A stretch of DNA of 63,911 nucleotides, the filler included, from Octopus bimaculoides (lineage: Eukaryota), in assembly GCF_001194135.2 (NCBI RefSeq). It is 9 parts of 9 records of this genome, joined end to end, with 100 filler letters (N's around TTAATTAATTAA, not from the genome) between each part and the next. Parts side by side here need not be neighbours in the genome. Positions count along the whole stretch, not along the records: positions 16,849 to 28,491 come from NC_068981.1; 8 more parts are not named here. One strand, given 5' to 3'. The position numbers and the translations under genes are program-made. Under the pieces are notes generated by a model. That model had not been told where the DNA came from. It saw only the letters and a list, made by a program, of their open reading frames with translations, and searched no databases. Positions 13,062 to 27,570 of this stretch are shown here, piece after piece (position 1 is the stretch's first letter; the number at the start of each line of letters is the position of its first letter).

Positions 13062-13437
13062 NNNNNNNNNNNNNNNNNNNNNNNNNNNNNNNNNNNNNNN
13101 NNNNNNNNNNNNNNNNNNNNNNNNNNNNNNNNNNNNNNNNNNNNNNNNNNNNNNNNNNNNNNNNNNNNNNNNNNNNNNNNNNNNNNNNNNNNNNNNNNNN
13201 NNNNNNNNNNNNNNNNNNNNNNNNNNNNNNNNNNNNNNNNNNNNNNNNNNNNNNNNNNNNNNNNNNNNNNNNNNNNNNNNNNNNNNNNNNNNNNNNNNNA
13301 TCTTGACATGAAAGTAGCATGAAACGTGCGTACTGCAATCACTTTTGAAATCCGTGTTGCTTATTGTTTGATTTTAATCACCCATCCTTTTGGGATGTGA
13401 TATTCGGGTGCCTTCGCATAAGTACCATATTCAAGCC

Positions 13438-13479
<42 letters not shown>

Positions 13480-14574
13480 CAGAATGGGAGAAACAAGAAC
13501 GCAAAACATCCAGACAGTTAAATATATATATATATAAGTTAAGGAATAAGCTGTAACTGTTTTAACGCGCATGAAGGAAACGTTTTTTTCAGTATTACTG
13601 GGAATCCGATATTGCATTGGTTGGACAGCATCATATCTGCAGCAATGTCTTGGCTACGAAACTAATGAAAACAGAAAATTCCTCAGAACCGTATTACAAA
13701 CAATTCAAACAAAACTGTCTTTGTTTTTAATAACTGAGCTTTTGAAGTTTGGATCAGATATATCTAAGTAACTCTTCCTGACAAATTTGAATATAACTTT
13801 TAGAAAAAATCGAAAGAAAATTCAAGCAGGATTGCTTGGCAGGAAAGCGTAGTTGTCGGCAATTGTTACTGATGTCGATTAAGTTGAGGTGCTAATACAA
13901 TGTTTGATATTATTTGTCCTTCTCCGCCTGTATTTTAAGCTACGTACTTCAAATATTTTATGGAATACAAGAAACGGCCGTGTAGAAAATTCAGCAATAC
14001 GTCATTATATGTTTCTCACAATCTATTTTGTTATCAACAATGATGTAGTTGCTGTTGTTATGGATGCATTTCTTGTTGTTACTGTTGACTTTTGTCCATG
14101 CTTTTTTTGGTTATCTGCTACTGACCCATTACGTCGGGGCTTATTTGTACGCGAAATACTTTTAGCACATTAAGTAAACATGCTTTGAACAGCCATCAGA
14201 GAAATGTGCTAATTTCGATATAAAATTCCATGGTTCCGTCTCCGTTCGAGCTTTTACTGAATCATGCTGGCTTTAGCAATACACTTTCCTAAAAATTGTG
14301 AATTAGTTATGTACCTCTGAGCCACTTAAAACCATTATGCATCAGATACACACATATTCTCAAGGTTATGGATATATACAATTCATACATAAAAGAAATA
14401 GGTAGATGTTTTTGAAAACCAAGTAAATAAAAAATAAAACAGGGATGAACTGATTACGACAAAACTATCGTCATAACAAGAAAGTAAATAATGAATTAAT
14501 TTACTAAAATGCAAATCAGAAGGCTGTATCAAGTGATATCCAACATGAGATTAATATTGCTTTCAAATTTTCAC

Positions 14575-17000: not shown

Positions 17001-17086
17001 TTAATAATACACGAACCTAGAACATTTATATTTGCCTCTCCTAAAAATTCCGAAAACCTTTGGAATGCACCTCGTTATATATATAC

Positions 17087-17120
<34 letters not shown>

Positions 17121-17164
17121 ATGTGTGCGTGCGTGTGTGTGTGTGTGTGTGTGTCTGTGCGTCT

Positions 17165-17700
17165 GTGTGTGTAAGGCATTTGATGAGAGTGGTCCACAAA
17201 ATCCTGCTGAAGAAACTGTTCAACATTGGAGTCCGTGGAAAGCTGCTGCAATGGATAAAGTGTTTCCTGACGAACAGAACCCAACATGTTGTGTTCGAGG
17301 GAATACGATCCAGCTTAGCCAAAGTCAGTAGTGGTGTCCCTCAAGGTACTGTGTTGGGATCACTTCTCTTCATTATCTACGTCAATGACATAGACGTCAT
17401 TAAATATTCTACACTGAAAATCTTTGCAGATTATTCCAAACTCCAGAAAGCCATAAACGGTATGGGAGACCGAACGTGCCTTCAGTCAGATCTGTTTGCT
17501 ATTGTCCAATGGGCGGGAAAAAACAAAACACAAAAAAACAATATGCTTCTAAATGAAGATAAGTTTGATTTGATCCACTTTGGAAAAGAGGAAACTTTGA
17601 AATTACCATATGCCCTTCCCTCGGGCGACTCCCTTACTGTCATTCAACAACACTAGAGACCTTGGAGTAATTGTTGATAACAATCTTAAGCTGGGGTTCC
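17165..17700 (+). mobile_element. CR1/L2-group LINE reverse transcriptase fragment
   Basis: VHKILLKKL...GKLLQWIKCFLTNRTQHV...SGVPQGTVLGSLLFIIYVND...IFADYSK...LQSDL..IVQWA. Confidence 0.9.
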
Positions 17701-17929
17701 CACGTAAACAGCAAGGTTGACTTGCAAATAAAATTTAGAAAAATCTAAGGCCGAGAAGGGACAGAATATGACCATCAATACATTGAGAGTGGTGAAAGAG
17801 GATTTGTTAGAACTAGGATTCAGTCGATGCTCAGGAGTCATGAAGTAGCTACAAAATCTTCCGTGGGCGCCATGTGAACCCCATGAGCCAAATGGACCTC
17901 GGTTGAGAACCATTTGTCGAGAGGATTAT

Positions 17930-18115
17930 CCAGGGTGTGATAGCTGTAAGGAGTGAGGATTGTACTAGTATACTGGCTGGTACGCATTCTAGCAGAGCAG
18001 ACCGAAATAACATGAAATGAAGTGCCTCACTCAGAAACACAGCGTTTCGACTAGCCGAGAATTGAACCCACGACCTTATGGTTGTCAGCGGAACACCCCC
18101 AACCGGAAGCCTCGA
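17930..18115 (-). mobile_element. Decayed tRNA-derived CORE-like SINE
   Basis: The minus strand has GGTCGTGGGTTCAATTCTC (B box) followed by TGTGTTTCTGAGTGAGGCACTTCATTTCA (CORE-like). Confidence 0.55.
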
Positions 18116-18395
18116 CTAAAGTGTTCAATGAAGCAGAAATTAAAACAATATCGAGTAAGTTTTGATATGGTACTTCATGTGTACAAATATAAATATAAAC
18201 AGAATAAGATTCGCTCAGAAATGCAATTGACCTTTTTGGTCAAGCTCTATCAAAGTTTACTTTTCTTATCATCTGTATGGGGCACCGGACAGATACTGGG
18301 TGTATTTAATAAACTATACTCTCCCCAACAATCTAGGGACTTGTGTTATATTATTATAATTATGTTAGGGAATAGAATGGTCTATAATCTCTTTA

Positions 18396-18414
18396 TGACA
18401 TCACACTGACGTCA
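18396..18414 (+). promoter_or_regulatory. Tandem CRE-like sites (TGACATCA at 18396-18403, perfect TGACGTCA at 18407-18414)
   Basis: Motifs read directly ~110 bp upstream of the ATG at 18525, with a further ACGTCA half-site at ~18431. Function is inferred only. Confidence 0.4.
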
Positions 18415-18524
18415 CAAACGTAGAAATTGAACGTCATTCTTTCAAGCTCTTTCTTTCACCGTGTTTCAGATTTAACTTCGTGACCAATTTTTCTATACAG
18501 TAGATTAAAACCTCAGATAGAAAG

Positions 18525-19058
18525 ATGGTTACTTTAAGCAGCAGTTCTCGCAGATATCCATACAGAGTATACAAAGGACACAGAAAAGTAACGAGATGTT
18601 CGAAACACTCAAAACCGAGTTCTTCCAAATATTTGAACGATAACCGAAGATCGCAGAGCAAAAGTAACCGGTATCGCAAGAGTTTGAGCAGAAGTAATTC
18701 GAAAAATTCTTATAGGCCTCTTCACGGGATGAAGAAAACTAAAAGAGATTCCAGGAGACATAGATTTCGGGGTAAAGGAACTTCAAATCGAAGAACGAGG
18801 CTGAGAGTCAAGAGGCGTAGGCGAACTCGCAATCATACAGGCGCTTTGACGAAACAAGCTGCGATGCCTCAAGATTGTTCAGAACAGGAGAATGCTGATA
18901 CCATGGAATCACAATCGAATACCCCAGTAAATGATTCTACAAACGAAGTGGAAATGGTTCGTAGTGTCCAGACCGATGAAAATATGCCAAATGCGTTGGC
19001 AATGGACAGTAAAGACCAAGGGGTAAAAACACAAAATGCGTCTGTCGGTACGGCTTAA
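18525..19058 (+). CDS. Orphan 177-aa protein: Arg/Lys/Ser-rich basic N-half and acidic C-half; candidate nucleic-acid-binding or sperm nuclear basic protein
   Basis: Uninterrupted, non-repetitive 534-nt ORF in AT-rich DNA. The start context is AAGATGG, AATAAA lies 20 nt after the stop, and no TE motif was recognised. Confidence 0.55.
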   Translation: MVTLSSSSRRYPYRVYKGHRKVTRCSKHSKPSSSKYLNDNRRSQSKSNRYRKSLSRSNSKNSYRPLHGMKKTKRDSRRHRFRGKGTSNRRTRLRVKRRRRTRNHTGALTKQAAMPQDCSEQENADTMESQSNTPVNDSTNEVEMVRSVQTDENMPNALAMDSKDQGVKTQNASVGTA

Positions 19059-19078
19059 TATTGATTTGAATTTAAAAA

Positions 19079-19084
19079 AATAAA
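19079..19084 (+). terminator. Candidate polyadenylation signal for the 18525 ORF
   Basis: AATAAA followed by T-rich and GT-rich sequence (~19130-19160). The motif is common in AT-rich DNA. Confidence 0.35.
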
Positions 19085-19259
19085 GAAATGAAAATATTAA
19101 TTTTAGTCATATTCTCAAACATAAACCTTTTTTAAGTCGTATTTCAATTTTTTCTTGTATAAAAAGAATAATTGATGTTAACTTGAATACTTCAAAGAGA
19201 TGGCAGATATGGCAAGACATAAATAATTTCTGGTGTAACGCCCGTAATTACATGTGTAA

Positions 19260-22200
19260 TACCTTAATTACATGAAGGTTACATTGTCGTTTGGGAATCT
19301 GAAGATAACTCACCGTAGATGTAAGTTGAAATGAACGGTGAAACCGGAAGAACACTCAATGTGAGCTACATGTCCTGGATCGACGTTATCCTGGATACTA
19401 TGTATGTATGTATGTATGTATGTATGTATGTATGTATGTATGTATGTATGTATGTATCTATCTATCTTGAAAACATCCCCTAATCTATGACGATCCCTCA
19501 GATATTTTGGCAAAGCATTAAATAGCTGTGGGCTCTTGAATCCCAAGCTACTACAGTACATGGTCCTCACTCTAGACGGAACAGTTGGGATATTTGTAAC
19601 AGTTCGGAGGTCTTTATAGTTCTTGATGTCAAAGTTTGATACCAACCCCTCCAAGATCATCCAAACGTATATCACTGCATCTCTCTCCCATCTTCGCTCC
19701 AGGGAGTAGATTCGTAGCTCTTTCAATATCTCCTAACTGCTCATCTGTTCAATTGATGCAACCTTCCTGATGTAGTACCGTTGAACAGCCTGAAGCTCCG
19801 CTATTATTTTGACACTGTGATATGACCACAGTTGAAAACGGTAGACCAGATGATTATATAGAAATGTACTCCATAGAATCAGCGTAGTTTCCTGGTCCCT
19901 TGTTCTGAAGGTTCTCAATCCATTCGGCCATTCGCTTTCACATTGTCACCATATTGGTGAAACGAGGCGTCATCGCCTATTCCCAGATCACGTACTGTAT
20001 TTGACTCAAGGATCGCTGTTCCATTTGGTCCAAAGTATCTTTGGACCAAATCTTTGGTCCAAGTATCTTTGGATCAAATGTTGCAAGATGTGAGTACTAG
20101 CTACCTCATAACAGAGGCCTTGGAATTTACTTGCATTAAATTGCATGTTGTTTTCTTTAGTCCATTTATATATATAACATCTAGGTCTTTTTGTAGAAGA
20201 TTAGTAAAAGTTCCTCGACTGTTTATACTATTTTGTGTCGTCAACAAAGCTTGTAAATGTGGCTGTCTGCGTAACTGATGGCATGTCCAAGAGAGCCACT
20301 ATAAATTGCAGCGTCCTCAATACAGTTCCCTGAGGCACCCACTTGTTATTACTGTTTCCTTGAAGAGGGACCCATTGACTGTCATAGACAGGCTTTTGTC
20401 TGTTAAAAAGTTATGTAACTATTCTTTCAGTTTTCCTGCTATACCGGGTCTCCGTGGCTTGTGACATATCATCCCATGATTAACCTTATGAAAGTCCTTT
20501 GCAAAATCGAGATATATCACATCCATGTTTGAGCGATTCATTAGTTGTTTCAAGACCCAGTCATTATGCTGCAAAAGCTGTGTAAGGCATCTTTTTCTTG
20601 AACGGAAGTCATGCTGGATGTCAAGGACAAGTCGTTATCTTCGAGGAACGCGATCTGTTTCCTCCTGACAATACGTTCTATAACTTTACTGATATGGGAG
20701 ATGAGGAAGACAGGTCTGTAATTTTTAGCATCTGTACTGTACCTCTCCTATGGATGGGGGCATATTACGCTTTCCCTTAACTCTCTGAGAAATCTTCTAG
20801 TTGCGAGGGAGCTGTGAAAGAGGATCGGTAGTGGTCATGCTAGAGCGCCTTTGCATTTCTTTTGGGGGATTGCTGGGAATCCATCGGTGCCTGTGGCTGA
20901 GTTTAACCTAATTTTCATCAATGGCTGATATTACATCCGTTTCCTCTTATTTCGATGTTTTCAATAATTGCCATTTCTTTGTGTAGAGCTATGGTACCGA
21001 AGAATTCATCAGGTATAGCTATTTGCATGTGCCTCAATGGAGTTGTGAAAACATTCTTGTATTGGACATTCAGCATTTCACTGATCCTCCGCGGGTCAGC
21101 AGTCGCCGAGCCATTTCCTTCGAGCAGTAGCCCTATCTTGTTCCGTACTGAAGCAGACTCTTTTGCAAATCTATCGAAGGCTTTAGGGTTTTTCTTTATA
21201 TGTTGTCTCATAAATGCAATTAGTGTGTCACGCCCTGAGTTCCACAAAGGGATCTGGGATGTGCAATTCTGAAAAAGGATTTGGGGCGTGTAACTCTGCA
21301 AAAGGAGCTGGGGGTGTGTGCAATTCTGCAAAAAGATTTGGGGCGTGCAACTCCACAAAGGGATCTGGGGCGTGCAATTCCACAAAGGGATCTTTTCTGT
21401 TGCTTTGCAATGCAACATACTTTTGCAATGTCAGATTTTAGGTGCGTTTCGGTGAGTGTTATGCAAAGGGCCTGATTGCATGCCACAAGGTCGCTCAGGA
21501 AGGTAATTTTTGTTCTGTCGTCACAGAGTTGTAACAGTCCTCTAATGTTTATAAAGTATATTGGTGAGACATCTATGTTGATAGCAGTAAATGAATGCCT
21601 GTGGATGTTGATGTACTTTGTATATATAGACCGAGGCTTGTTCTTGTGTGAGCGTTAACGCGATAGGGCAAAACTACAATCCAGGAGTCCTTATGGAAGT
21701 GGAGGAAGGAACTCAGTTAAACATGGTTGCAGCCACGTTTATATAAGTGACAATCGGACGTAGTAGAGAGAGCCTGATCGGATGTAGTAGAAGGAGCCTG
21801 TCTATTCGGCCAGTCACAGACCGAATACAACTGTAAACTTACAGTGCCGTCTGAGCCTTCTTGAGATTAAAAATGTATGTGTTAACTAATGCTAGTACAG
21901 GCATGCTACAGATCCATTGGATGTGGCGGTCTTGTGTGTTGGTGGGGATGGCTCCAACTCTGGAATTGATGTAGCTAGGTCAGTTGTCGCACAATCTTTT
22001 GTGCCATGCAGCCCTTATAATGGTTTCTGGAAAAGACTGACTTTTAGAGGCAGTATGCACTACATCAAACATATTTCAGTTATGATGCAGGTGATTTGCG
22101 ACTTCTCTCTTTGTTGATTGGTCCTTTTGGAGGGAAGCTTTTGTTTTGCATTTGATCCACTTGTGGCATGGTTTTGAGTGTAGGAAGCGGCAGTTTACAC

Positions 22201-22985: not shown

Positions 22986-23301
22986 GCACATCCAATGGAC
23001 CTGTAGCATGCCTGTACTAGCATTAGTTAACACATACATTTTTAATCTCAAGAAGGCTCAGATGGCACTGTAAGTTTACAGTTGTATTCGGTCTGTGACT
23101 GGCCGAGTAGACAGGCTCCTTCTACTACATCCGATCAGGCTCTCTCTACTACGTCCGATTGTCACTTATATAAATGTGGCTGCGACCATGTTTAACTGAG
23201 TTCCTTCCTCCACTTCCATAAGGACTCCTGGATTGTAGTTTTGCTCTATCGCGTTAACGCTGGCTTTTCTCACACAAGAACAAGCCTCGGTCTATATATA
23301 C
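21620..23301. repeat. ~305-bp near-perfect inverted repeat (arms 21620-21925 and 22987-23301)
   Basis: The arms align end to end with a few substitutions and one ~9-nt indel (GGCTTTTCT in the right arm). Confidence 0.95.
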
Positions 23302-23914: not shown

Positions 23915-24665
23915 GAATCCTTCAAATGTGATACAAACATTCAATTCTAATTTAAAACACGCTGTTTAAGATTGGCATCATTACCAGCATTGAAATCGAA
24001 AATGGCGGTCAAAATCCAAGATGGCGCCCAACATTAAAAAAGTAAAACTTGCGATGAACAAAAAATAAGTTTTATTATAGTAAACCTTATATTTACTTTT
24101 TGAAGGAATTTTCTGCTATCGTCTTCACTAATTCAAGTTATACATACCAGACGGGATACATATAGGGCCAAGCTCTCCAGACGAAGCCAGTACTGCCATC
24201 ACCTATCAACTGGAGGGTGAAAAAATAATGACGATGGCACATTCACTGGACTGAACTAAGTGCCATAGAAGAACAATGCCAAGCACTTAAAAAGGGCCAT
24301 TGCAAAACTGAATGTGTAGGACGTTGCACATGCAAGAAGTCAGCCCTTCCCTGTACTTCAATTTGTGCTTGTCCATGCATTTGATTAATGATGACACCTG
24401 TATAACCTGAATTAGTGAAGAAAATAGTAGAAAAATGCATCAAGAGGTAAATATAAGGCTATTTGTGTAAAATGTTGCATAATAAATAACGTTTATTATT
24501 TTATTATAATAAAACTTATTTCTTGTTCATCGCAATTATCAATGTTTAATGCTGGACGCCGCCTTGAAAATTGGCCGCCATTTTCGATTTTCACGTTGGT
24601 AATCATGCAAACTTTAGGTGTGCCAGATTGTATGTTTATTTGCATTACTTCTTGAAGGATTTTCC
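23915..24665 (+). mobile_element. Internally deleted DNA transposon with long degenerate inverted repeats and a Cys-rich transposase tail (Academ-like)
   Basis: Arms at ~23915-24080 and ~24500-24665 share GAAAATGGCGG and TTGCGATGAACAA.AAATAAGTTTTATTATA. The interior reads YQTGYI*GQAL...LPSPINW...HWTEL...CKTECVGRCTCKKSALPCTSICAC. Confidence 0.6.
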
Positions 24666-26225: not shown

Positions 26226-26769
26226 CAACAATACCACCCACCGACTTTGTTGCCTCACAACTTCCAGAAAAACAGAATTGAGTGTGTAATGATTNNNNNN
26301 NNNNNNNNNNNNNNNNNNNNNNNNNNNNNNNNNNNNNNNNNNNNNNNNNNNNNNNNNNNNNNNNNNNNNNNNNNNNNNNNNNNNNNNNNNNNNNNNNNNN
26401 NNNNNNNNNNNNNNNNNNNNNNNNNNNNNNNNNNNNNNNNNNNNNNNNNNNNNNNNNNNNNNNNNNNNNNNNNNNNNNNNNNNNNNNNNNNNNNNNNNNN
26501 NNNNNNNNNNNNNNNNNNNNNNNNNNNNNNNNNNNNNNNNNNNNNNNNNNNNNNNNNNNNNNNNNNNNNNNNNNNNNNNNNNNNNNNNNNNNNNNNNNNN
26601 NNNNNNNNNNNNNNNNNNNNNNNNNNNNNNNNNNNNNNNNNNNNNNNNNNNNNNNNNNNNNNNNNNNNNNGGAGAGTCTGAGAAAATTATTACTGGGATT
26701 TATCCAGAGTGATTTTAATAAGAGGTAATGTAAAAGACGATTTATTTTGATAGCATAATTTTCCGGAGT

Positions 26770-27075
26770 GGCCGACCAAAGCCTTGTGAGTGGATTTGGT
26801 AGACGGAAACTGAAAGAAGCCCGTCGTATATATGTATATATATATATATGTATATGTATTTGTGTGTTTGTGTTTGTCCCCCTAGCATTGCTTGACAACC
26901 GATGCTGGCGTGTTTATGTCCCCGTCACTCAGCGGTTCGGCAAAAGAGACCTAGAATAAGTACTAGGTTTACAAAGAATAAGTCCCGGGGTCGATTTACT
27001 CGACTAAAGGCGGTGCTCCAGCATGGCCGCAGTCAAACTGACTGAAACAAGTAAAAGAGTAAAAAGAGTAAAGAG
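26770..27075 (+). mobile_element. SINE family A, 5'-truncated, with (GTAAAAGA)-type tail
   Basis: GGCCGACCAAAGCCTTGTGAGTGGATTTGGTAGACGG...GGCGGTGCTCCAGCATGGCCGCAGTC...AAGTAAAAGAGTAAAAAGAG. Confidence 0.9.
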
Positions 27076-27084
27076 TTAGAAAAT

Positions 27085-27570
27085 ATTTGTTTGCTTTAAG
27101 TTTTCCTCTCAAAAGATCGTCTTTAGCACCAACAACAACTTGATCCATAATAAGTCTGTCTTTTAATTCTCCAAAGCTGCAGTTTTTTGCAAGTTGGCGC
27201 AAGACAGATATGAAGGTTTCTATGTTCTCAAAATTTTCCTGTTTTCGAAGGTGGAATTGATAAGACTCATAAGCCGTGTGCGTCTCACCAACGAAAAATT
27301 CCTCGAATTTGTTAATCACTTCAGATAGGTCCTTTTTCTGTTCTTCATCGTCAAATTGTAGTCCTTCATATATATCAAAACATTCTTCTCGAATAGTTCT
27401 CCAGAAATACTGAAGTTTGATATCCAGTATCGACTTCATTTGAGAGTCGACTGGCAATTGAATAATTCAAAAAGCCTCGTTTAAATCTTCTCCAATTGCT
27501 AGCCATATTTCCTGATAAAAGACATTTACTTCGGTGGTGGGACACTAGCAGAAAAAGGCCTTGCGGACAT
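27085..27570 (-). pseudogene. Ty3/Gypsy gag N-terminal region, disrupted and truncated by a SINE
   Basis: GNMASNWRRFKRGFLNYSIA, then FEEFFVGETHTAYESYQFHLRKQ...IETFISVLRQLAKNCSFGELKDRLIMDQVVVG. Confidence 0.85.

What the first reader, a model, noticed from the sequence alone, without database searches (positions are those of the whole stretch)
18525..19058. Intact orphan ORF encoding a basic/acidic bipartite protein amid dead transposons
Seen: 177 codons with no stop in an AT-rich region where every TE frame is broken. By hand count there are ~25 Arg and ~13 Lys plus many Ser in the first ~102 residues (ending RVKRRRRTR), then ~12 Asp/Glu and few basic residues in the last ~65. It has an AAGATGG start context and AATAAA 20 nt downstream. 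Established: Arg/Ser-rich small proteins include sperm nuclear basic or transition proteins and viral genome-packaging proteins, and cephalopod protamines are made from precursors. Inference: a lineage-specific chromatin-condensing or RNA-binding gene, possibly with a self-neutralising acidic tail. An endogenised viral fragment is the alternative.
Basis: partly seen in the sequence, partly recalled or inferred. Interest (0 to 1): 0.75.

Follow-up and report, generated by a model that had tools for sequence, protein, structure and literature searches.

The report
Octopus-only basic/acidic disordered protein gene
The open reading frame is a real, intronless gene found only in octopods; it is the faster-evolving of two tandem copies and encodes a small disordered protein with a strongly basic front half and an acidic tail, whose role (probably binding DNA or RNA in the nucleus, possibly in developing sperm) is untested.

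Summary
Residues 1-102 hold 25 Arg, 13 Lys and 19 Ser (pI 12). The last 65 residues hold 12 Asp/Glu (pI 4). The start context is AAGATGG, and AATAAA lies 20 nt after the stop.

It is not a chance ORF, a transposon ORF or a detectable viral fragment. Full-length orthologues exist at the syntenic site in Octopus vulgaris (90% identity) and in another octopod (77%), and every indel is in frame. O. vulgaris has a 182-aa paralogue ("B", 41% identity) 8 kb upstream, and Argonauta hians has a single 167-aa homologue. Nothing else turned up among 5.8 billion proteins, and there was no Pfam, PDB, PHROG or IMG/VR match.

All six gene copies examined share a compact promoter: a palindromic CRE 111-130 bp before the ATG, a conserved leader, and AATAAA 13-35 nt after the stop. 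B and Argonauta also have a TATA box.

B is under clear purifying selection (dN/dS 0.21). The finding's copy, A, is only weakly constrained (0.56-0.79), and its acidic half changes at the rate of the flanking DNA.

AlphaFold predicts disorder (pLDDT about 50).

A chromatin or RNA-binding role is plausible, but it rests on composition and gene anatomy alone. No expression data could be reached.

The parts
18370..18387 (+). Conserved distal promoter block (GAATAGAATGGTCTATAA in the window)
   Evidence: Aligned and largely invariant in all six gene copies: A and B in Octopus, plus Argonauta hians.
18396..18403 (+). CRE-like site TGACATCA. The B paralogue and Argonauta have the perfect palindrome at this position.
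   Evidence: Promoter alignment A5; positions of perfect CREs in the loci.
18407..18414 (+). Perfect palindromic cAMP-response element TGACGTCA, 111-118 bp upstream of the ATG
   Evidence: It is the only occurrence in the whole window (0.10 expected by chance). A perfect CRE lies 118-130 bp upstream of the ATG in every other family member.
18420..18427 (+). Position homologous to the TATA box of paralogue B and Argonauta; degenerate in gene A (GTAGAAAT)
   Evidence: Alignment A5, columns 93-100.
18431..18436 (+). Extra CRE half-site ACGTCA, present only in the A copies
18450..18465 (+). Conserved block with an invariant CCGTGTT. It lies about 30 bp after the TATA position, so it is the inferred initiator and transcription start, giving a leader of about 65-75 nt.
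   Evidence: Alignment A5. The start site is inferred from spacing and not shown by any transcript.
18490..18524 (+). Conserved 5' leader ending in the AAGATGG start context
   Evidence: 84% identical between paralogues A and B over the last 45 nt, against 61-67% in the coding sequence and 54% in the 3' flank. Still recognisable in Argonauta.
18525..18830 (+). Coding sequence, basic half (codons 1-102; 25 R, 13 K, 19 S; K[KR]x[KR] motifs at residues 70 and 96)
   Evidence: dN/dS 0.35-0.43. 91.6% nucleotide identity to the SRR11869391 octopod, against 85.5% in the far 3' flank.
18831..19058 (+). Coding sequence, acidic/polar half (codons 103-177) and the stop codon
   Evidence: dN/dS 0.74-1.7. 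85.6% nucleotide identity, the same as the flank. Short acidic motifs are nevertheless shared with paralogue B and Argonauta.
19079..19084 (+). AATAAA polyadenylation signal, 20 nt after the stop
   Evidence: Conserved in the orthologues. B and Argonauta have AATAAA 13-35 nt after their stops.
19085..19131 (+). Conserved 3' end region. Synteny with O. vulgaris stops at 19131.

Best explanation
Window 18370-19110 is one compact, intronless gene restricted to octopods. The window is most likely Octopus bimaculoides.

Inferred gene anatomy: a proximal promoter built around cAMP-response elements drives a transcript of about 0.65 kb. This has a leader of about 70 nt, a 534-nt coding sequence, and a very short 3' UTR with AATAAA.

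The product is a 177-aa, fully disordered, very hydrophilic protein with no signal peptide. Its N-terminal 102 residues carry net charge +36, are rich in Arg/Lys/Ser/Tyr, and contain classical K[KR]x[KR] nuclear-localisation-type motifs. I take these to be a nuclear-import and nucleic-acid-binding module. The acidic C-terminal 65-75 residues carry a few short motifs shared with the paralogue. I take this half to be a tail that either folds back on the basic half, tempering its DNA/RNA binding, or docks a partner.

The gene is copy 'A' of a two-gene tandem family (A and B, about 8 kb apart in O. vulgaris). B is strongly constrained. A keeps its frame but evolves about 3-4 times faster at the protein level and is richer in Arg.

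Shown: the ORF, its conservation, the family, the shared promoter, leader and poly(A) elements, predicted disorder, and the lack of known relatives.

Inferred: transcription start, nuclear location, nucleic-acid binding, the role of the tail, and any link to spermatids.
For: - ORF and composition.
- Orthologues of 179 and 177 aa at 90% and 77% identity. The O. vulgaris copy is at the syntenic site on chromosome OX597814.1. All internal indels (3, 9 and 3 nt) are in frame.
- Neutral simulation: keeping the start and avoiding stops in all three lineages has P about 0.02 from substitutions alone.
- Paralogue B at L001 1764-2312: 41% identity, E 8e-25, same layout. It is also present in O. bimaculoides as A0A0L8GAK6 and in the SRR octopod.
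- The A-B synonymous distance is 0.74-0.92, so the A frame has stayed open long after the duplication.
- Argonauta hians homologue: E 3e-22.
- B has dN/dS 0.21 (p 2e-4); A against the SRR octopod has 0.56 (p 0.04).
- Shared CRE, TATA, initiator block, leader and AATAAA.
- No hydrophobic stretch, and conserved K[KR]x[KR] motifs.
- AlphaFold2 pLDDT 51 and 50, pTM 0.09 and 0.10, with only one 3-residue helical turn in the B model.
- Low copy number: each protein cluster has 1-2 members on 1-2 contigs.
Against: - No transcript, protein or localisation data could be reached, so every functional step is inference from composition and gene anatomy.
- In gene A, differences are spread evenly over codon positions (7/11/8, 18/19/23, 17/22/20), unlike B (7/4/14).
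- A's acidic half is no more conserved than the 3' flank.
- Between O. bimaculoides and O. vulgaris the coding sequence (94-96%) is no more conserved than the DNA upstream of it (92-95%).
- CREs are not tissue-specific: in mouse, CREM/CREB occupy thousands of promoters of many kinds (PMC3091680).
- Gene A has lost the canonical TATA box that B and Argonauta keep.
Confidence: 0.55

Rival explanations
1. The protein is a sperm nuclear basic protein: a transition-protein-like or protamine-like factor made in spermatids from a CRE-driven, intronless gene. It helps displace histones, and the acidic tail keeps it soluble or is removed.
For: - Arg/Lys/Ser/Tyr/His-rich basic half with some Cys: 2 in A, 5 in B, 8 in Argonauta.
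- Compact intronless gene with CRE(+TATA) and very short UTRs. In mammals CREM/ACT bind CREs in the TNP1, TNP2, PRM1 and PRM2 promoters (PMC8753101).
- Fast protein evolution, tandem duplication and lineage restriction.
- A is more Arg-rich than B and Argonauta, the direction usually seen in sperm basic protein evolution (the trend itself is from my own knowledge).
- Octopods are reported to have a cysteine-rich protamine (Gimenez-Bonafe et al. 2002, as listed in PMC11607694).
Against: - Only 25% Arg in the basic half and 15% overall, and the family's slower members are Lys-rich.
- No match to any protamine or transition-protein Pfam model.
- Basic-N/acidic-C is the reverse of the cephalopod protamine precursor layout as I recall it.
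- No expression or proteomic evidence.
- CREs are common in non-germline promoters (PMC3091680).
Confidence: 0.25
2. Gene A is a relaxed, slowly decaying duplicate. B is the working gene, and A's frame is still open mostly by inheritance and luck.
For: - Flat codon-position spectrum in A.
- dN/dS 0.74-0.79 with p 0.26-0.31 in two of the three pairs.
- Acidic half evolves at the flank rate.
- No contrast with neighbouring DNA in the bimaculoides-vulgaris pair.
- Canonical TATA lost.
Against: - The frame is open in three species (P about 0.02 by substitutions alone), and all three internal indels are multiples of three.
- The A-B synonymous distance of 0.74-0.92 implies about 200 neutral hits per lineage without a stop.
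- The basic half has dN/dS 0.35-0.43 and is more conserved than the flanks against the SRR octopod.
- Charge pattern and R+K count (42-44) are kept.
- CREs, leader and AATAAA are retained.
Confidence: 0.13
3. It is a transposon ORF1/gag-like protein or an endogenised viral nucleic-acid-packaging fragment.
For: - Basic, disordered, nucleic-acid-binding-like composition.
- It sits between transposon remnants.
Against: - No Pfam, PDB, PHROG or IMG/VR relative.
- Single copy per genome plus one old tandem paralogue, at a syntenic position in two species.
- It has its own conserved promoter and poly(A) signal, with no repeats bounding the unit.
- Only five related protein clusters among 5.8 billion proteins.
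Confidence: 0.03
4. It is a chance open frame that automatic pipelines annotated as a protein; the conserved unit is really a non-coding element.
For: In the closest species pair, the promoter and leader are as conserved as the coding part.
Against: - About 0.014 such frames are expected in the piece.
- Frame, length and charge layout are kept in a 41%-identical paralogue and a 28%-identical Argonauta homologue.
- B shows third-position-biased change and dN/dS 0.21.
Confidence: 0.02

Closest known systems
Mammalian spermatid transition proteins TNP1/TNP2 and protamine genes
   Same: Small, basic, Ser/Arg/Lys-rich, disordered proteins. Compact genes with a CRE close to the start site (PMC8753101). 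Fast evolution.
   Different: No sequence relationship (no Pfam hit at E<=10). The protein is longer and has a 65-75-residue acidic half that those proteins lack. Arg content is far below that of protamines. Testis expression is unknown. The mammalian genes have an intron (my own knowledge); this one appears to have none.
Cephalopod protamines and their precursors (Sepia, Loligo; cysteine-rich protamine of Eledone, Gimenez-Bonafe et al. 2002, cited in PMC11607694)
   Same: Same animal group. A basic protein with some cysteines. The idea of a non-basic portion attached to a basic one.
   Different: From my own knowledge, those protamines are small and mostly arginine, and the removed leader is N-terminal. 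Here Arg is 25% of the basic half and the non-basic part is C-terminal. I had the Octopus/Eledone protamines in mind, but none came back as a hit in any search, so the comparison could not be made residue by residue.
HMGN (HMG-14/17) nucleosome-binding proteins and other basic proteins with acidic tails, such as HMGB1
   Same: Short, intrinsically disordered nuclear proteins with NLS-type motifs and a basic nucleic-acid or nucleosome-binding part, followed by an acidic C-terminal regulatory tail. Restricted to one animal lineage (HMGN: vertebrates; my own knowledge). This is the closest match for how it may work.
   Different: No HMG14_17 or HMG-box Pfam match, and the basic part here is much longer and more highly charged. 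This is an analogy of layout only, not membership.
SR-related / RS-domain proteins
   Same: Ser- and Arg-rich disordered basic region.
   Different: Only 6 RS/SR dipeptides, and no RRM or other domain.

Membership tests
Protamines (Pfam Protamine_P1 / Protamine_P2 and relatives) | Sequence match to a family profile | tested here: not met
   hmmscan against Pfam-A at E<=10 gave 0 families for the window protein. At E<=1, three of the four relatives scanned had none, and P0003 had only two chance-level matches to unrelated families (Dsh_C, EsV_1_7_cys; E 0.3-0.4).
Protamines (Pfam Protamine_P1 / Protamine_P2 and relatives) | Very high arginine content (about half or more of the residues) in a short mature protein | tested here: not met
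   25 of 102 residues (25%) in the basic half and 26 of 177 overall. The Argonauta member has 14 R and 26 K.
Protamines / sperm nuclear basic proteins in general | Presence in spermatid or sperm nuclei | not testable with these tools
   No expression or proteomic data could be reached. Searching the papers for the accession numbers found nothing.
Spermatid transition proteins (Pfam TP1, TP2) | Sequence match to a family profile | tested here: not met
   No Pfam hit.
Cephalopod protamine precursors | Short N-terminal leader followed by an arginine-rich mature part | tested here: not met
   The layout here is basic N-terminal half then acidic C-terminal half. The family's layout is from my own knowledge and was not retrieved by any tool.
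HMGN | Conserved nucleosome-binding domain (Pfam HMG14_17) | tested here: not met
   No Pfam hit.
LINE ORF1 / retroelement gag / viral nucleocapsid | Profile or structural match to a known gag, ORF1 or nucleocapsid family | tested here: not met
   Pfam, PDB (single sequence and profile), PHROGs and an IMG/VR scan were all negative. The structure models were too poor for a fold search.
LINE ORF1 / retroelement gag / viral nucleocapsid | Many dispersed copies, non-syntenic between species | tested here: not met
   One syntenic orthologue and one tandem paralogue in 20 kb of O. vulgaris. Protein clusters have 1-2 members on 1-2 contigs. A whole-genome copy count was not possible.
SR proteins | RRM plus an RS-dipeptide-rich domain | tested here: not met
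   No RRM; 6 RS/SR dipeptides.
Octopod A/B family defined here | About 167-183 aa, basic N-half and acidic C-half, alignable end to end; CRE 111-130 bp before the ATG; AATAAA within 35 nt of the stop | tested here: met
   There are 36 invariant columns across the seven sequences.

The most novel reading that the evidence does not exclude
Octopods evolved their own family of spermatid chromatin-remodelling proteins, unrelated by descent to vertebrate transition proteins or to H1-derived protamine-likes. These genes are switched on through the same CRE logic as mammalian TNP/PRM genes. After a tandem duplication, one copy (the gene in this window) is drifting from a Lys-rich towards an Arg-rich form, which would be an early step on the road from basic nuclear protein to protamine. 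The conserved acidic tail would act as a built-in chaperone.
Probability: 0.22. Interest if true: 0.6.

Novelty: new variant of a known kind. Interest (0 to 1): 0.35.

Why it matters
If the family turns out to act in sperm chromatin, it would be an independent invention of a histone-replacement helper in a lineage whose sperm basic proteins are known only biochemically. It would also be a clean case of a duplicated pair with one conserved and one fast-evolving, Arg-enriched copy. If it is instead a general nuclear disordered protein, it is one more taxonomically restricted cephalopod gene. It would then be useful mainly as an example of how such genes keep charge layout, promoter and leader while the sequence drifts. 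Either way the practical gain is modest: two unannotated or 'hypothetical' octopus genes get a family, a gene model and a testable expectation.

Tried and rejected
- Pfam on the protein and four relatives: no supported match; only chance-level hits for P0003.
- PDB by sequence and by profile: only chance-level hits, E 0.5-1.1.
- PHROGs: nothing meaningful.
- IMG/VR viral contig scan with the family alignment: 44 pattern matches, none confirmed.
- Three word-indexed searches of 5.8 billion proteins and one exhaustive profile search of 1.84 billion representatives: only the octopod sequences came back.
- AlphaFold2 on A and on B with the five-sequence alignment: pLDDT about 50, no fold. I therefore did not run fold search, because matches to such models are meaningless.
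- Rfam and tRNA scans of the piece: nothing.
- The sigma-70/terminator scan is irrelevant to an animal genome and gave background counts.
- Exact-protein look-up of the window protein and of the O. bimaculoides B protein on contigs: not on record. No transcript contigs were found. The Logan contigs that carry the SRR orthologues include promoter and microsatellite flanks, so they are genomic, not mRNA.
- Literature: searches for octopus protamine or SNBP work, for the accession numbers, and for the SRR run prefix gave nothing usable on this gene.
- The GACCAAT at 18482-18488 looked like a CCAAT box. I rejected it because it is not kept in B or Argonauta and lies downstream of the inferred start site.
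- The pyrimidine tract plus AG at 18490-18500 looked like a splice acceptor. I rejected it because the TATA and initiator blocks lie less than 50 nt upstream, leaving no room for an exon and an intron.
- The antisense ORF 18434-18679 (-) is interrupted in both orthologues.

Full report
**1. The observation**

The piece holds an ATG-initiated open frame at 18525-19058 (+) of 177 codons.
- An in-frame TAG lies eight codons upstream (18501-18503), so the ATG is the first possible start.
- The start context is AAGATGG (18522-18528). AATAAA sits at 19079-19084, 20 nt after the stop.
Residues 1-102 contain 25 Arg, 13 Lys and 19 Ser, with net charge +36 and pI 12.0, and they end in RVKRRRRTR. Residues 113-177 contain 12 Asp/Glu and 3 Arg/Lys, with pI 4.05.
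- With the piece's composition (40% GC), only about 0.014 frames of this length are expected in six frames.

The flanks do contain repeat debris:
- a reverse-transcriptase fragment at 17060-17653 (RVT_1, E 6.5e-6, below Pfam's cut-off because it is a fragment);
- a stretch at 19496-21086 that has a second, inverted copy at 65-71% identity in the O. vulgaris locus.

**2. It is a conserved gene, not a leftover frame**

A search of 5.8 billion proteins returned two full-length relatives:
- a 179-aa 'hypothetical predicted protein' of Octopus vulgaris (CAI9715817.1), 90% identical;
- a 177-aa protein from Logan assemblies of runs SRR11869391 and SRR11869384, 77% identical.

The window's own protein is already in UniRef. 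Together with the O. bimaculoides origin of the paralogue described below, this makes O. bimaculoides the likely source of the window (inference).

The O. vulgaris copy lies on chromosome OX597814.1 at a syntenic site. Window 17722-19131 aligns collinearly with it at 90-94% identity.

The two Logan contigs run from microsatellite to microsatellite and include the promoter, so they are genomic DNA from a third, unidentified octopod.

Evidence that the frame is maintained:
- In the three-way DNA alignment, every indel inside the frame is a multiple of three (3, 9 and 3 nt), while indels outside it are not.
- I simulated neutral substitutions on a tree scaled to the synonymous distances. All three lineages keep the start and avoid stops with P about 0.02, before counting the in-frame indels.

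**3. It belongs to a small family**

BLAST of the piece against the O. vulgaris locus turned up a second, diverged match 8 kb upstream of the orthologue. That site holds an intact 182-codon frame at L001 1764-2312, which was not called as a gene there. Its product aligns end to end with the window protein at 41% identity (E 8e-25) and has the same basic-then-acidic layout.

I call the finding's gene A and this one B. B also exists elsewhere:
- in O. bimaculoides, as UniProt A0A0L8GAK6, 'uncharacterized protein';
- in the SRR octopod.

A profile of A plus B found one more relative: a 167-aa hypothetical protein of Argonauta hians. It is 49% identical to B and 28% to A, and it is the only copy within 10 kb either side.

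A further profile search that included Argonauta, and an exhaustive HMMER pass over 1.84 billion cluster representatives, found nothing outside octopods. Seven sequences share 36 invariant columns, spread over both halves.

**4. Gene anatomy**

The 200 nt before the ATG align across all six gene copies. The shared blocks, in order, are:
- an 18-nt distal block (window 18370-18387);
- a CRE position (TGACATCA at 18396-18403 in A; the perfect palindrome in B and Argonauta);
- a second CRE/AP-1-like position (perfect TGACGTCA at 18407-18414 in A);
- a TATA box in B and Argonauta, which is degenerate in A (18420-18427);
- about 30 nt further on, a block with an invariant CCGTGTT (18450-18465), which I take to be the initiator region;
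- a leader ending at the ATG.

Supporting numbers:
- The perfect CRE is the only one in the window (0.10 expected by chance).
- A perfect CRE lies 111-130 bp before the ATG in every member.
- Between A and B, the last 45 nt of the leader are 84% identical. The coding sequence is 61-67% identical and the 3' flank 54%. The leader itself therefore seems constrained.
- All members have AATAAA 13-35 nt after the stop.

There is no room for an intron between the TATA/initiator blocks and the ATG. The inferred transcript is therefore unspliced, about 0.65 kb long, with very short UTRs. None of this is backed by a transcript.

**5. Selection**

- B is clearly constrained. O. vulgaris against the SRR octopod gives dN/dS 0.21 (Fisher p 2e-4), differences of 7/4/14 at codon positions 1/2/3, and about 95.5% identity in both halves against 73-80% in the outer flanks.
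- A is not clearly constrained. dN/dS is 0.56-0.79 (p 0.04-0.31), and the differences are spread evenly over codon positions.
- A's basic half has dN/dS 0.35-0.43 and 91.6% identity to the SRR octopod. Its acidic half has 0.74-1.7 and 85.6%, the same as the far 3' flank at 85.5%.
- Between O. bimaculoides and O. vulgaris, the coding sequence is no more conserved than the DNA upstream of it.
- At the protein level, A has changed about 3-4 times as much as B between the same two species (90% against 97% identity).
- Even so, A's frame has stayed open since a duplication with synonymous distance 0.74-0.92. Its R+K count (42-44) and its D+E count (14-16) are stable.

I read A as a functional but weakly constrained, fast-evolving copy. 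I give 'decaying duplicate' a confidence of 0.13.

**6. What the protein is like**

- No Pfam family matches the window protein at E<=10. At E<=1, its relatives give nothing beyond two chance-level hits for P0003.
- The PDB gives only chance-level hits, by sequence or by profile.
- PHROGs and a scan of IMG/VR are negative.
- AlphaFold2 with the family alignment gives pLDDT 51 (A) and 50 (B), pTM 0.09-0.10, and no secondary structure beyond one 3-residue turn in B. That is predicted disorder.
- GRAVY is -1.5 and no 15-residue stretch is hydrophobic. This rules out a signal peptide or membrane segment, and with them secreted-peptide readings.
- A K[KR]x[KR] motif at about residue 70 is kept in every member, followed by an invariant R-D-S-R a few residues later. 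A has a second such motif within RVKRRRRTR.
- Cysteines number 2 in A, 5 in B and 8 in Argonauta. Argonauta is Lys-rich (26 K, 14 R), B is balanced, and A is Arg-rich.

**7. Most likely mechanism**

A charge of +36 over 102 disordered residues, with NLS-type motifs and no targeting signal, points to a nuclear protein that binds DNA or RNA electrostatically (inference). The acidic tail carries a few motifs that survive between paralogues and into Argonauta. It is best read as an intramolecular damper of the basic half or as a docking site. This is the arrangement known from HMGN proteins and from HMGB1's acidic tail (my own knowledge; analogy only, as no homology was found). The promoter suggests control by a CREB/CREM-type factor.

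Several features fit a spermatid chromatin role:
- an intronless compact gene with very short UTRs;
- fast evolution, tandem duplication and lineage restriction;
- the mammalian precedent that CREM/ACT act on CREs in TNP and PRM promoters (PMC8753101).

But CREs are bound at thousands of unrelated promoters (PMC3091680), and no expression data were available. I therefore hold the sperm-specific reading at about 0.22-0.25. It is not a protamine by any tested criterion.

**8. Comparison with the known, and novelty**

The closest analogues by layout are HMGN-type basic proteins with acidic tails. By composition and gene anatomy, the closest are the transition proteins. Membership of each was tested by profile search and was not met.

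The family members sit in databases only as hypothetical proteins, and B is unannotated in the O. vulgaris locus I read. The family as such appears undescribed: searching the papers for the accession numbers found nothing. I rate it a new variant of a known kind, namely small basic disordered nuclear proteins, and of moderate interest.

**9. Limits**

- Only three A sequences, two B coding sequences and one outgroup were available.
- The SRR species is unidentified.
- Whole-genome copy number could not be counted.
- No transcript or peptide evidence was reachable.

Noticed in passing
L001 1764-2312 (+) (O. vulgaris OX597814.1, about 8 kb upstream of the orthologue): An intact 182-codon paralogue (B) with its own CRE, TATA box and AATAAA. 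It was not among the genes called in this locus, although its O. bimaculoides counterpart is in UniProt (A0A0L8GAK6).
   Followed up: yes
window 17060-17653 (+), with (GT)n at 17089-17172: ORF fragment with a partial reverse-transcriptase match (RVT_1, E 6.5e-6, below the curated cut-off). A microsatellite runs through its 5' part. It is a LINE-type remnant; I did not count its breaks.
   Followed up: partly
window 19496-21086: Matches L001 6215-4716 in reverse orientation at 65-71% identity, so it is a dispersed repeat copy lying just 3' of the gene. ORFs at 19310-19726 (-) and 19733-19918 (-) lie in or next to it, and a (TATG)n array sits at 19399-19465. No Pfam family was assigned.
   Followed up: partly
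window 21245-21393: Tandem array of a 27-nt unit, 5.4 copies, 76% matches. It creates several overlapping repetitive ORFs on both strands.
   Followed up: no
window 21753-21800 and 23112-23159: Two 24-nt x 2 arrays that are reverse complements of each other, about 1.4 kb apart. They may be terminal inverted repeats of a small DNA element.
   Followed up: no
window 23967-24144 and 24399-24616: Foldback-type inverted repeat: three adjoining arm pairs, 78-85% complementary. The same structure is present at about 13250-13900 of the O. vulgaris locus at 82-86% identity.
   Followed up: partly
window 26996-27457 (-): A 153-aa acidic ORF with no Pfam match above noise. By eye it resembles a retroelement gag-like N-terminal region, but this is unconfirmed.
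   Followed up: partly
window 19131 / L001 10611: Synteny with O. vulgaris breaks 47 nt after the AATAAA. The SRR octopod contig stays collinear with the window for about 115 nt more, so the rearrangement is on the O. vulgaris side.
   Followed up: partly
window 18434-18679 (-): An 81-aa antisense ORF overlaps the start of the gene. It is interrupted by stops in both orthologues, so it is a chance frame.
   Followed up: yes
window about 26290-26665: A run of N (376 bases in the piece), which is an assembly gap. ORFs that cross it are artefacts.
   Followed up: no
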